Assembly: GCF_030028105.1 (NCBI RefSeq)
Contig: NC_092379.1
Span: 28,203,821-28,267,820, forward strand
Direction: 5' to 3'
Length of the DNA: 64,000 nt
From: Mobula birostris
Lineage: Eukaryota
Part shown: piece by piece, positions 31,032 through 33,533 of the stretch
Position numbering within the stretch: position 1 is the stretch's first letter
Layout of the letters: each line of letters opens with the position of its first letter
Notes under the pieces: model-generated
What the model saw: only the letters and a program-made list of their open reading frames with translations
What the model was told of the DNA's origin: nothing
Database searches by the model: none
Made by a program: the position numbers and the translations under genes

Positions 31032-31325
31032 GTTCATTGAGCCAGTCGGTGACTCAAAGCCCTTCCATTGTAAACTTGAATGAGTGTCAGACTGCCACTA
31101 TCACCTGCAGTTTCAAGCCTGGTTTTACTGGTGAATATCGCTTTCTCACTGGAAAATTCTTCAGGCAGACCAACTCAGCGACCGAACGGAAAGAAGTCAC
31201 CCGCGGGGGGAGATTTTTTACTTTGATTAAGAAAACTGACATGCAGTTTTCTTTGGCAATTCGGGACCTGCGAGTGGAAGACAGCGGCACCTATTACTGT
31301 CAAGCTGTGTACAGATGGCGTGAAG
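31032..31325 (+). CDS. IgNAR-like V segment (NAR-TCR V)
   Basis: SLSQSVTQSPSIVNLNECQTATITCSFKPGFTGEYRFLTGKFFRQTNSATERKEVTRGGRFFTLIKKTDMQFSLAIRDLRVEDSGTYYCQAVYRWRE. The frame is open, with canonical Cys at 31106 and 31298. It has VNAR-like GGR and FSL-x-I-x-DL-x-VEDSGTY motifs and no CDR2. Confidence 0.93.
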
Positions 31326-31363
31326 CACAGTGATGGGCTTCGGCTTCGCGCTGTACAGAAACT
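31326..31363 (+). promoter_or_regulatory. V 3' RSS, 22-bp spacer (23-class)
   Basis: CACAGTG 31326-32, 22 nt, ACAGAAACT 31355-63. Confidence 0.93.
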
Positions 31364-31689
31364 TTCGCTGTAGCTTATTCCTGATTCAGACGGAGCAGAC
31401 TGGATCTGCGGGTCAGCTCATCTTCCTGTCTCGCTGTGGATCCGTCCTGCAGTCCAGTTAACTCTCAGTTTTTTTTGTTCTAATCATGTACAGTCTTCAT
31501 GCTCCCACCTCGCGTGTCCGCAGATTTTGCTGCCTACCTGAGGTATTTGTCAATAAATGTCTACAGAGAATTAAAAAATACACATTCTTGTCACCAACGA
31601 GAGACAGAATCGTTATTGAACACATGGAACCAGAAAACGCCAGCGCAGCGAAATTAATTCCTGCTCGACTCTTTCATTGATTCGCCAGC

Positions 31690-31717
31690 AGATTTCAAAT
31701 TCACGTAACGTATTGTG
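31690..31717 (-). promoter_or_regulatory. D 5' 12-RSS (weak nonamer)
   Basis: AGATTTCAA 31690-98 (4/9 match to GGTTTTTGT), 12 nt, TATTGTG 31711-17 (reverse complement CACAATA). Confidence 0.6.
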
Positions 31718-31733
31718 TACATTTCGGGGCGAA
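31718..31733 (+). CDS. D segment (16 nt)
   Basis: TACATTTCGGGGCGAA lies between two heptamers and is open in all three frames (YISGR, TFRGE, HFGA). Confidence 0.85.
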
Positions 31734-31761
31734 CACAGTGGAAGAGATCTGAACAAAAATA
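31734..31761 (+). promoter_or_regulatory. D 3' 12-RSS
   Basis: CACAGTG 31734-40, 12 nt, ACAAAAATA 31753-61. Confidence 0.92.
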
Positions 31762-32115
31762 GAAAATAATAAATATATATATAACTCATTGTTTTAACGA
31801 GTTATTCTCCATATCTCCTACAAAAAAATACAAACCTGACGTTGTTCACCTTCTAATCAGTTTAGATTATTTTAAATTTCCATATTGCTTATGTATTTTT
31901 GATTGACACGTATGCTATGTGTTTGCTTTTTTTTTCTTTTCGGAATCGGTGTGCAATACGTGTTCCTATTTTATTTTAATTTGGTTTTGCTTTCTCACAA
32001 AGAACATATCGACCTGCCGGCAAATGGGGAATATTTTTGCTCTGTGTTGCACGAACAACCCTCGGAACATTGGGAATCCTATTGTGGCGTTTCCTAAGCA
32101 AATTCACGTTAGTGT

Positions 32116-32154
32116 ATTTGTTGTATAGTGGAGACTGAGAACAGTATCATTGTG
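32116..32154 (-). promoter_or_regulatory. J 5' 23-RSS
   Basis: ATTTGTTGT 32116-24, 23 nt, CATTGTG 32148-54. Confidence 0.85.
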
Positions 32155-32212
32155 TATCAATGGGAGACTCATACTCTAGATGGAACAGGGACAACGGTCA
32201 CGGTCACGCCCG
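32155..32212 (+). CDS. NAR-type J segment
   Basis: YQWETHTLDGTGTTVTVTP plus G has the G-x-GT-x-VTV motif, with a phase-1 donor GTAAGT at 32213. Confidence 0.92.
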
Positions 32213-33230
32213 GTAAGTATCCGTAGGCATCGACGATTTTTCATCTCAGCCATTTTCACTATCGTTTGATAGATGATCGATTGATTTAAAACCTTGTGTG
32301 GTGTAATTCTCTAAACTAAATCTATACTCACTGTGTAGAAAGGCAAGGTGATAGACTGAATTCACAGAGTGAGATGGAGAGGGAAATTTCTGCTAAGAGT
32401 AAGGATGAAATGTTGGTGTAATCGTCGTAGAATGAATCCAACCGACTGCTGTCAGACTGTGGGAAATATTGTTAGCAGTTTAAGGCATAAACCGCAAGCA
32501 GATAAGATATATATGAATATGTCACCGAGATGCAAGAAATAATGAATCTTGTTTTCTCCAATTTATTCTCAAATAGTACAGTGAAATAACCAATTGATGA
32601 AAAATGAAGAAAAGAGAAGGGAACAAAACGTTTATATCACCGCTTGCTAAACCCCAATTGAAAATAATCTTCGCCTTCAGTTGCCTGGAAAATTATCTGA
32701 CCAATCTGTCCCGTTCAATCTTATTACTGTGAAGAACATGTTACACTGCAATAGGCTGAAACTTATCGGGGATATGTTATTTACAAGAAGAGGCAATTCT
32801 GGATGGAGCATCTATCAACTCGAAAAATAAAACAGGCAAATCCATAATTATTCCGAATTAAACTGACGTATAAAATAAACACCACAGAACTTATATAAAA
32901 AAAAAGAGTTCGGCCCATTTTTGTTGGTAGGCCCTCTTCAATTGTTCCATGGAATTAGTTCTTCTTTCCACATAGATGGCCAAAATATGAAACATGTTTT
33001 GATAATAGCAAGATATCCGCAAATTAGCATGAGTCCCTGATTTTATTTCACTGCAGCAATTCAGATAATAATTGTGAACGACAATAAATATTCTTTACTC
33101 ACATTTCAAATGAATCAAGTTCGCGTGAAAGAAAAATCTCCGTAACGTGTTTGGGGCATTATTATGTTGTTTTTTTTTTTCCTGACATTTATCGGTAAAT
33201 CAGCAATAATCTTCCTTTACATTCATACAG

Positions 33231-33533
33231 AATCCATTTCTCCACCGTCTCAGAGTCCGGAACTGCAAACTACACTTGCCGACACTGCCATTTTAACCTG
33301 TGGATTTGACGTGAATTGTCGCAACACAATACACTGGTATCGCCAGCTTCCAGGACAGGCACTCATATTCCTGCTCCAGGGACAAACTTTCGGAGCACAA
33401 GATAAGACAAAAAATGCCGGAGAGCGAATTACTGGTTTTGTCGATCCTGGTAAGAAAATCAGCCAGCTGACGATCTCCAAAGTGCAACTGGGTGACGCTG
33501 CTGTGTATTACTGTGCAATGAGTCCGTTTGCAG
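33231..33533 (+). CDS. TRDV: Supporting TCR-delta-like V segment
   Basis: Acceptor cttcctttacattcatacag|33231, and J G plus AA gives Glu in frame. SISPPSQSP...AILTCGFDVNCRNTIHWYRQLPGQALIFLL...SQLTISKVQLGDAAVYYCAMSPFA. The symbol is family-level only. Confidence 0.9.

What the first reader, a model, noticed from the sequence alone, without database searches (positions are those of the whole stretch)
31085..33319. Matched non-canonical cysteines predicting an inter-domain disulfide
Each V has exactly three Cys. The extra ones are in FR1 of the NAR V (NLNECQT, codon 31085-87) and in CDR1 of the supporting V (FDVNCRN, codon 33317-19). This pairing is the arrangement proposed for shark NAR-TCR, locking the base of the NAR domain onto the top of V-delta. 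It is strong internal evidence that the two V genes work as one chain.
Basis: partly seen in the sequence, partly recalled or inferred. Interest (0 to 1): 0.7.

Follow-up and report, generated by a model that had tools for sequence, protein, structure and literature searches.

The report
Known NAR-TCR cysteine pair, ray copy
This is an intact germline gene cassette for the shark-and-ray "NAR-TCR", a T-cell receptor delta chain with an extra antibody-like domain on top; its two extra cysteines are the family's known hallmark pair, thought but never shown to tie the two domains together.

Summary
The two Cys codons lie exactly at 31085-87 and 33317-19, and each mature V exon encodes exactly three Cys.

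The stretch 30855-33572 is one complete germline NAR-TCR cassette: leader, NAR-type V, D, J ending in a splice donor, then a leaderless V-delta opening with an in-phase splice acceptor.

The Cys pair (a-b turn of the NAR V, CDR1 of the supporting V) was already described for nurse shark and elephant shark as a "putative interdomain disulfide" (PMC1845163). This scan has also noted NAR-TCR cassettes, and this Cys pair, elsewhere in the same genome.

In 73 two-V gene models from 15 named shark and ray species, the a-b Cys is kept in 72 and the CDR1 Cys in 71. That is better than the supporting V's own canonical Cys23 (61 of 73). Secreted VNARs and ordinary bird V-alpha/delta genes lack these cysteines.

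RNA-like contigs show productive V-D-J joints, and the J spliced to the supporting V.

Limits: three otherwise intact-looking paralogs have lost one Cys of the pair. No tool here gave coordinates, so the Cys-Cys distance stays unmeasured.

Verdict: a new member of a known system, and the bond itself is still an inference.

The parts
30855..30897 (+). Leader exon of the NAR-type V (ATG at 30855; donor GT at 30898, phase 1)
   Evidence: Read directly. The last base A joins GT of the V exon to give a Ser codon, keeping the frame open.
31032..31325 (+). NAR-TcR V exon (acceptor AG at 30-31). It has F in place of the canonical Trp (FFRQ).
   Evidence: Pfam V-set, E 3.9e-9. The best solved relatives are shark VNARs, E 4e-13. 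The Trp position is F in nearly all homologs.
31085..31087 (+). Extra Cys codon in the A'-B (a-b) turn of FR1, seven residues before canonical Cys23 (six residues between)
   Evidence: The column is Cys in 72 of 73 homologs. The aligned residue in the four solved VNARs shown is Gly.
31326..31363 (+). RSS of the NAR V: CACAGTG, 22-bp spacer, ACAGAAACT
31690..31761 (+). D segment (coding 31718-31733). It has a weak 5' 12-type RSS (TATTGTG) and a good 3' 12-RSS (CACAGTG, 12 bp, ACAAAAATA).
   Evidence: There is no Cys codon in the forward frames.
32116..32212 (+). NAR J: 23-RSS (ATTTGTTGT, 23 bp, CATTGTG at 32148-54) and J exon 32155-32212 (..DGTGTTVTVTP). It is followed by donor GTAAGT, not by a C exon.
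   Evidence: RNA-like contigs join the V end to 32156, 32162 and 32166.
33231..33533 (+). Leaderless supporting TCR-delta V exon (acceptor AG at 33229-30, phase 1)
   Evidence: Pfam V-set, E 1.4e-11. The frame continues from the J. A contig splices the J to 33230/31.
33317..33319 (+). Extra Cys codon in CDR1, six residues after canonical Cys23
   Evidence: The column is Cys in 71 of 73 homologs. It is absent from 18 of 18 bird V-alpha/delta relatives. It is unchanged in the contigs that cover it.
33534..33572 (+). RSS of the supporting V: CACTGTG, 23-bp spacer, TCAAGAACT
   Evidence: One contig leaves the window exactly at 33533 and runs on into D/J-like letters.

Best explanation
The stretch 30855-33572 is one intact germline NAR-TCR cassette of a ray-like cartilaginous fish. 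In a developing T cell the NAR-type V joins its own D and J. The J exon is then spliced directly, with no linker, onto the leaderless supporting V-delta. That V in turn rearranges to TCR-delta D/J and is spliced to C-delta. The result is a three-domain delta chain. Shown here: the gene anatomy, the open frame across both joins, transcripts of that form from this copy or close copies, and strong conservation of both extra cysteines. Inferred: the A'-B turn lies at the bottom of the NAR domain, next to the end of its G strand. CDR1 lies at the top of the supporting V, next to its N-terminus. With a zero-length junction the two thiols should meet and form a disulfide that fixes the free-standing NAR domain on the V-delta. 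This makes supporting-V CDR1 a structural loop rather than an antigen-binding one.
For: Anatomy and frames.
Family hallmarks as stated in PMC1845163 are all present. These are a leader on the NAR V, an a-b loop Cys, loss of the WYRK Trp, a leaderless associated V-delta and a CDR1 Cys.
The NAR V is closest to VNARs.
Conservation was counted in 73 two-V gene models from 15 named species. The a-b Cys is kept in 72 of 73 and the CDR1 Cys in 71 of 73. The supporting V's own Cys23 is kept in only 61 of 73 and Cys104 in 68 of 73.
The window's supporting V is the most divergent of the set. It differs at 8 of 33 conserved columns, and all five residues between Cys23 and the CDR1 Cys differ from the consensus, yet the Cys is kept.
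In sharks the whole CDR1 is nearly invariant, as expected of an interface.
Controls lack the cysteines: VNARs have Gly at the a-b position, and 18 of 18 bird V-alpha/delta genes have no CDR1 Cys.
Parity: the germline cassette and two observed productive junctions give exactly six Cys, so each extra Cys has only the other as a free partner.
An AlphaFold2 model of a Mustelus tandem (pLDDT 90, pTM 0.74) puts the two Cys in the loop between strands 12-16 and 21-28 and the loop between strands 134-141 and 147-153. These are the a-b turn and CDR1.
Transcripts: one contig runs V end, junction, J, supporting V. There are three different V-J joints. The supporting V ends at its heptamer and continues into D/J-like sequence.
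Against: No coordinates were available, so the Cys-Cys distance was not measured.
A docking run of the two domains as separate chains gave no verdict.
Three gene models have lost one Cys while keeping the other: Pristis P0225, a-b C to F; Stegostoma P0178, CDR1 C to D; Cetorhinus P0197, CDR1 C to R. They are not otherwise decayed, with 5, 3 and 1 deviations at 60 conserved columns against a median of 3. No model has lost both. With both columns nearly invariant, covariation cannot prove the pairing.
The joined transcripts come from copies 91-96% identical to the window, one of them from a differently labelled organism. Only single-exon contigs match this copy exactly.
The bond has, as far as the held literature shows, never been demonstrated chemically or by a solved structure.
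Confidence: 0.7

Rival explanations
1. The cassette is a true NAR-TCR, but the two conserved cysteines do not bond to each other. Each serves another role, for example a bond to the TCR-gamma partner, to a somatically generated CDR3 Cys, or between receptors, or it stays a free thiol.
For: Single losses occur in 3 of 73 otherwise intact gene models and no joint loss is seen. There is no structural measurement. Unlinked domains were not docked.
Against: Germline D and J offer no Cys in the forward frames, and CDR3 columns hold Cys in only 3-5 of 58 models, so there is no regular alternative partner within the chain. Both cysteines occur only in the two-V context. They are absent from secreted VNARs and from ordinary V-alpha/delta genes. 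Both lie at the domain junction by Ig-fold topology.
Confidence: 0.2
2. The CDR1 Cys is a back-up or replacement partner for Cys104 inside the supporting V. It would be used when canonical Cys23 is missing, and would not be an interdomain link.
For: Twelve of 73 supporting V genes have W or Y at Cys23 but keep the CDR1 Cys.
Against: The window copy has all three Cys. Three catshark models have lost both Cys23 and Cys104 yet keep the CDR1 Cys and the NAR a-b Cys. The invariant a-b Cys of the NAR V would be left unexplained. A CDR1 loop residue six positions past Cys23 is unlikely to reach the buried Cys104 (inference).
Confidence: 0.05
3. The match is a coincidence in a dead or unused gene pair. 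The two V genes merely lie side by side.
For: The D has a weak 5' RSS (heptamer 5 of 7, nonamer about 4 of 9). No joined transcript matches this copy exactly.
Against: Both exons are open, and the splice sites and phases match. The RSSs obey the 12/23 rule, V 23, D 12/12, J 23. Exact-match contigs cover only exon sequence (31103-31287, 33330-33492) and none lie on the intron or spacers. The Cys columns are conserved across 15 species.
Confidence: 0.03

Closest known systems
NAR-TcR (NARTCR) delta chain of nurse shark and elephant shark (Criscitiello, Saltis and Flajnik 2006, as cited in PMC1845163; elephant shark copies in PMC1845163)
   Same: Same cassette order: leader, NAR V, D, J, leaderless V-delta. 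Same a-b loop Cys, same loss of the FR2 Trp, same CDR1 Cys in the associated V-delta and same double rearrangement.
   Different: This is a ray-type copy. The NAR V is 64% identical at best to sawfish models and about 45% to shark ones. The supporting-V CDR1 reads GFDVNCRNT against the EYSGFC(Q/P)YT held by nearly all other copies. A second, perfect 23-RSS follows the inner V.
Secreted IgNAR variable domains (VNAR; e.g. PDB 8hgi, 2ywy, 7fbj)
   Same: Closest solved sequences, E 4e-13 to 1e-8. The modelled outer domain superposes on VNARs with Z 17.9 and rmsd 1.6 A over 111 residues.
   Different: VNARs have Gly at the a-b position, keep the FR2 Trp, and are followed by IgNAR C exons rather than by a V-delta.
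TCR-mu of marsupials and monotremes (PDB 7k0x, 7k0z)
   Same: Also a three-domain TCR chain with an unpaired, diverse outer V stacked on a low-diversity supporting V (PMC3457774). It is among the better two-domain fits to the model (TMq 0.50).
   Different: It arose independently from VH-like genes in mammals. The fit is loose (rmsd 9.5 A). No solved chain matched both model domains as a rigid body. I know of no matched a-b/CDR1 Cys pair there, but did not test this.

Membership tests
NAR-TCR cassette | Outer V of IgNAR type with its own leader exon | tested here: met
   Leader exon 30855-30897 and V exon 31032-31325. Best solved relatives are VNARs.
NAR-TCR cassette | Cysteine in the a-b loop of the NAR V | tested here: met
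   Codon 31085-87. Same column as in 72 of 73 homologs. The feature is named in PMC1845163.
NAR-TCR cassette | Canonical Trp of the WYRK motif absent from the NAR V | tested here: met
   FFRQ in the window. F or L at that position in the homologs. VNARs keep W.
NAR-TCR cassette | Own D and J with RSSs, and a J that ends in a splice donor leading to another V | tested here: met
   D at 31718-33 with 12-type RSSs. J at 32155-32212 with a 23-RSS and donor GTAAGT.
NAR-TCR cassette | Associated V-delta without a leader, opening with an in-phase splice acceptor | tested here: met
   AG at 33229-30. The last G of the J plus AA gives Glu, and the frame stays open to YYC.
NAR-TCR cassette | Conserved cysteine in CDR1 of the associated V-delta | tested here: met
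   Codon 33317-19. Cys in 71 of 73 homologs. Absent from 18 of 18 bird V-alpha/delta genes.
NAR-TCR cassette | Second rearrangement of the inner V to TCR-delta D/J | tested here: met
   23-RSS at 33534-72. One contig ends at 33533 and continues in D/J-like letters.
NAR-TCR cassette | Transcripts that carry NAR VDJ spliced to the supporting V | tested here: inconclusive
   Seen in one 215-nt contig, and in a J-like loose end on a second. Both come from copies 91-96% identical to the window. Exact matches cover single exons only.
NAR-TCR cassette | Linkage to TCR-delta D, J and C | not tested
   No C-delta exon or other V gene was found in the 64-kb window. Full-length homologs such as P0202 do carry C-delta.
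NAR-TCR cassette | Physical disulfide between the a-b Cys and the CDR1 Cys | not testable with these tools
   The model gives no coordinates. Docking gave no verdict. No NAR-TCR structure was found among solved structures.
IgNAR heavy-chain gene | V-D-J followed by IgNAR constant exons, with no a-b Cys | tested here: not met
   The J is followed by a V-delta exon. The a-b Cys is present where VNARs have Gly.

The most novel reading that the evidence does not exclude
The interdomain Cys pair, not the rest of the interface and not even the inner V's own canonical disulfide, may be the one fixed anchor of the two-V stack. In this ray copy CDR1 has been rewritten at every residue between Cys23 and the extra Cys, yet the Cys stays. 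In 12 of 73 copies from five shark genera the inner V has lost canonical Cys23 (three of them Cys104 as well) while keeping the extra Cys. If those copies are functional, supporting V domains can do without the Ig core disulfide as long as they are tied to the NAR domain.
Probability: 0.25. Interest if true: 0.4.

Novelty: new member of a known kind. Interest (0 to 1): 0.22.

Why it matters
It matters little for discovery. The receptor and its cysteine pair have been in the literature since 2006-2007. The value lies in annotation and in a broader survey. The pair holds across 15 shark and ray species, is kept better than the inner domain's own canonical disulfide, and survives in a copy whose CDR1 is otherwise rebuilt. 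That makes the still-untested disulfide a well-defined target for a structure or for peptide mapping. It is also useful to anyone who wants to engineer stacked single-domain binders on a TCR or CAR scaffold.

Tried and rejected
1. Docking of the two domains of Mustelus P0202 as separate chains gave no verdict: score 0.05 against a mark of 0.34, and my alignments were not used. This is no evidence either way.
2. The Cys-Cys distance could not be measured. The structure tool returns confidence and secondary structure only.
3. Foldseek and VIA-align against solved structures found no chain that fits both domains at once. The best two-domain TM-scores are 0.50-0.52, and every top VIA row covers one domain only. 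So no template geometry could be borrowed.
4. A word-based homolog search with the supporting V alone returned only bird V-alpha/delta genes. These were useful only as a control.
5. The primary paper (PMC1458790) and the 2021 review (PMC7909615) are not held. The prior-art statement therefore rests on PMC1845163.
6. I did not build a fused window protein for folding, because joined sequences are not accepted by that tool.
7. I considered and rejected an IgNAR gene, a chance pair of neighbouring V genes, and a pseudogene. See the rival explanations.

Full report
OBSERVATION

TGT at 31085-31087 encodes the Cys of NLNECQT, and TGT at 33317-33319 encodes the Cys of FDVNCRN. The first lies in a V exon at 31032-31325. 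That exon is preceded by a leader exon at 30855-30897 with a phase-1 donor and acceptor. The second lies in a V exon at 33231-33533 that has no leader and opens directly behind an AG acceptor.

Each V exon encodes exactly three Cys. These are the two canonical ones (ITC and YYC; LTC and YYC) plus one extra. The leader holds a fourth Cys, but it lies in the predicted signal peptide. Both exons are Pfam V-set domains. This is the only V-gene pair in the 64-kb window.

ANATOMY

- The outer V is followed by CACAGTG, a 22-bp spacer and ACAGAAACT.
- A 16-bp D lies at 31718-31733. It has a weak 12-type RSS on its 5' side and a good 12-RSS on its 3' side.
- A J lies at 32155-32212 (..DGTGTTVTVTP). It is preceded by a 23-RSS and followed by GTAAGT.
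- The last G of the J and the first AA of the inner V make a Glu codon, so the frame runs on into the inner V.
- The inner V ends in YYC plus a 23-RSS at 33534-33572.
- The RSS pattern (V 23, D 12/12, J 23) obeys the 12/23 rule. From my own knowledge, not tested here, this pattern is the shark immunoglobulin type rather than the TCR type.

WHAT IT IS

The outer V is closest to shark VNAR domains among solved structures (E 4e-13). It has F where V domains carry the FR2 Trp.

PMC1845163 lists the hallmarks of NAR-TcR genes in nurse shark and elephant shark:
- a leader on the NAR V;
- a Cys in the a-b loop;
- loss of the WYRK Trp;
- an associated V-delta without a leader;
- a conserved Cys in the CDR1 of that V-delta.

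The paper's figure legend calls the two cysteines "putative interdomain disulfide bridges". All five features are present here. The finding is therefore the known hallmark of a known receptor.

Earlier notes of this scan say the genome is a ray's and holds many such cassettes, including other copies with matched cysteines. I did not re-examine those stretches.

CO-CONSERVATION

An exhaustive profile search with the NAR V and two word-based searches gave 73 gene models that carry both V domains. They come from 15 named species: 11 sharks, the sawfish Pristis pectinata and three skates. The Cys columns were counted as follows.

| Column | Cys kept | Other residues |
|---|---|---|
| NAR V a-b turn | 72 of 73 | F (1) |
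| Supporting V CDR1 | 71 of 73 | D (1), R (1) |
| Supporting V canonical Cys23 | 61 of 73 | W (9), Y (3) |
| Supporting V canonical Cys104 | 68 of 73 | A (3), Y (1), gap (1) |

The extra cysteines are thus kept better than the inner domain's own core disulfide.

In sharks the whole CDR1 (EYSGFCQYT) is nearly invariant, as expected for a structural contact rather than a binding loop. The window's inner V is the most divergent of the set, differing at 8 of 33 highly conserved columns. All five residues between Cys23 and the extra Cys differ from the consensus, yet the Cys is in place.

The controls lack the cysteines. The four solved VNARs shown have Gly at the a-b position. Eighteen of 18 bird V-alpha/delta genes, the nearest single-V relatives found, have no CDR1 Cys.

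EVIDENCE AGAINST A STRICT PAIR

Three gene models keep one Cys and have lost the other:
- P0225 (Pristis pectinata), a-b C to F;
- P0178 (Stegostoma tigrinum), CDR1 C to D;
- P0197 (Cetorhinus maximus), CDR1 C to R.

They are not otherwise decayed. They show 5, 3 and 1 deviations at 60 conserved columns, against a median of 3. No model has lost both cysteines. Whether these copies are used is unknown.

Because both columns are almost invariant, covariation cannot prove the pairing.

PARITY

The D has no Cys codon in its forward frames, and the J has none in its reading frame. I laid two junctions seen in reads (25 and 15 inserted letters) on the window's exons. Both read in frame through the J into the inner V, with no stop and exactly six Cys. 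Within the chain, each extra Cys therefore has only the other as a free partner.

TRANSCRIPTS

Four public runs, guessed to be RNA, were laid on 30800-33600.
- Contigs lie only on exon sequence (31085-31287, 32156-32212, 33230-33533). None lie on the 1-kb intron or the spacers, which fits RNA.
- In one run a 215-nt contig carries, in order, the end of the NAR V, 15 inserted letters, the J, and the inner V as far as 33342. That span includes the CDR1 Cys codon.
- Three different V-J joints are seen (V cut back 3-7 nt, J cut back 1-11 nt).
- Another contig leaves the inner V exactly at its heptamer and runs into D/J-like letters.
- These joined contigs differ from the window at 4-9% of positions, and one run is from a differently labelled organism. 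They therefore come from close paralogs or relatives.
- Exact matches to this copy cover 31103-31287 and 33330-33492 only.
- No difference is listed at either Cys codon. The first codon lies at the very end of one contig, so it is barely covered.

STRUCTURE

I folded a 231-residue tandem from Mustelus (P0202:16-246) with a 58-row alignment. The model has pLDDT 90 and pTM 0.74.
- The a-b Cys falls in the loop between strands 12-16 and 21-28.
- The CDR1 Cys falls in the loop between strands 134-141 and 147-153.
- The outer domain superposes on VNARs (Z 17.9, rmsd 1.6 A). The inner domain superposes on ordinary V domains (Z about 18).
- No solved chain fits both domains at once.
- The marsupial TCR-mu chain is among the better two-domain fits, but loosely (TMq 0.50, rmsd 9.5 A).

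Folding the two domains as separate chains gave no verdict.

What remains is topology, which is inference. The A'-B turn lies beside the C-terminal end of the G strand at the bottom of a V domain. CDR1 lies beside the N-terminus at the top. Here the J runs into the inner V with no linker, so both thiols should lie close to the junction.

VERDICT

- Filing the stretch as a NAR-TCR cassette is secure (about 0.95).
- Reading the two cysteines as an interdomain disulfide is the best explanation (about 0.7). It is inherited from the literature and is still not demonstrated.
- The system is known. This is a new and rather divergent ray copy, so interest is low.

Noticed in passing
window 33595-33633: A second 23-RSS with near-perfect consensus (CACAGTG, 23 bp, ACAAAAACT) lies 55 bp behind the inner V's own weaker RSS. 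It cannot serve the V as it stands, because the frame meets a stop at 33539-41. Earlier notes of this scan report the same kind of spare signal behind other cassettes.
   Followed up: partly
homologs P0028, P0032, P0189, P0192, P0194, P0204, P0206, P0210, P0215-P0218: Twelve of 73 supporting V gene models, from Scyliorhinus, Hemiscyllium, Heterodontus and Mustelus, have W or Y at canonical Cys23. Three Scyliorhinus canicula models also lack Cys104. All 12 keep the CDR1 Cys and the NAR a-b Cys. Whether these copies are functional is unknown.
   Followed up: partly
window 31690-31761: The D has 12-type RSSs on both sides while the V and the J both carry 23-type RSSs, so it could in principle join in either direction. 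One junction (TGAACCCGCCCCCCC) shares six letters with the reverse strand of the D, which is too short to count as evidence. The reversed D would encode a Cys in one frame.
   Followed up: no
window 6774-8582 (-): A 603-aa open frame with a reverse-transcriptase domain (Pfam RVT_1, E 5e-40), most likely a LINE-type retroelement. Further RT-like frames lie around 45-49 kb.
   Followed up: no
window 2038-2336 and 55690-56051: Two runs of N (assembly gaps or masked stretches). They were left untouched.
   Followed up: no
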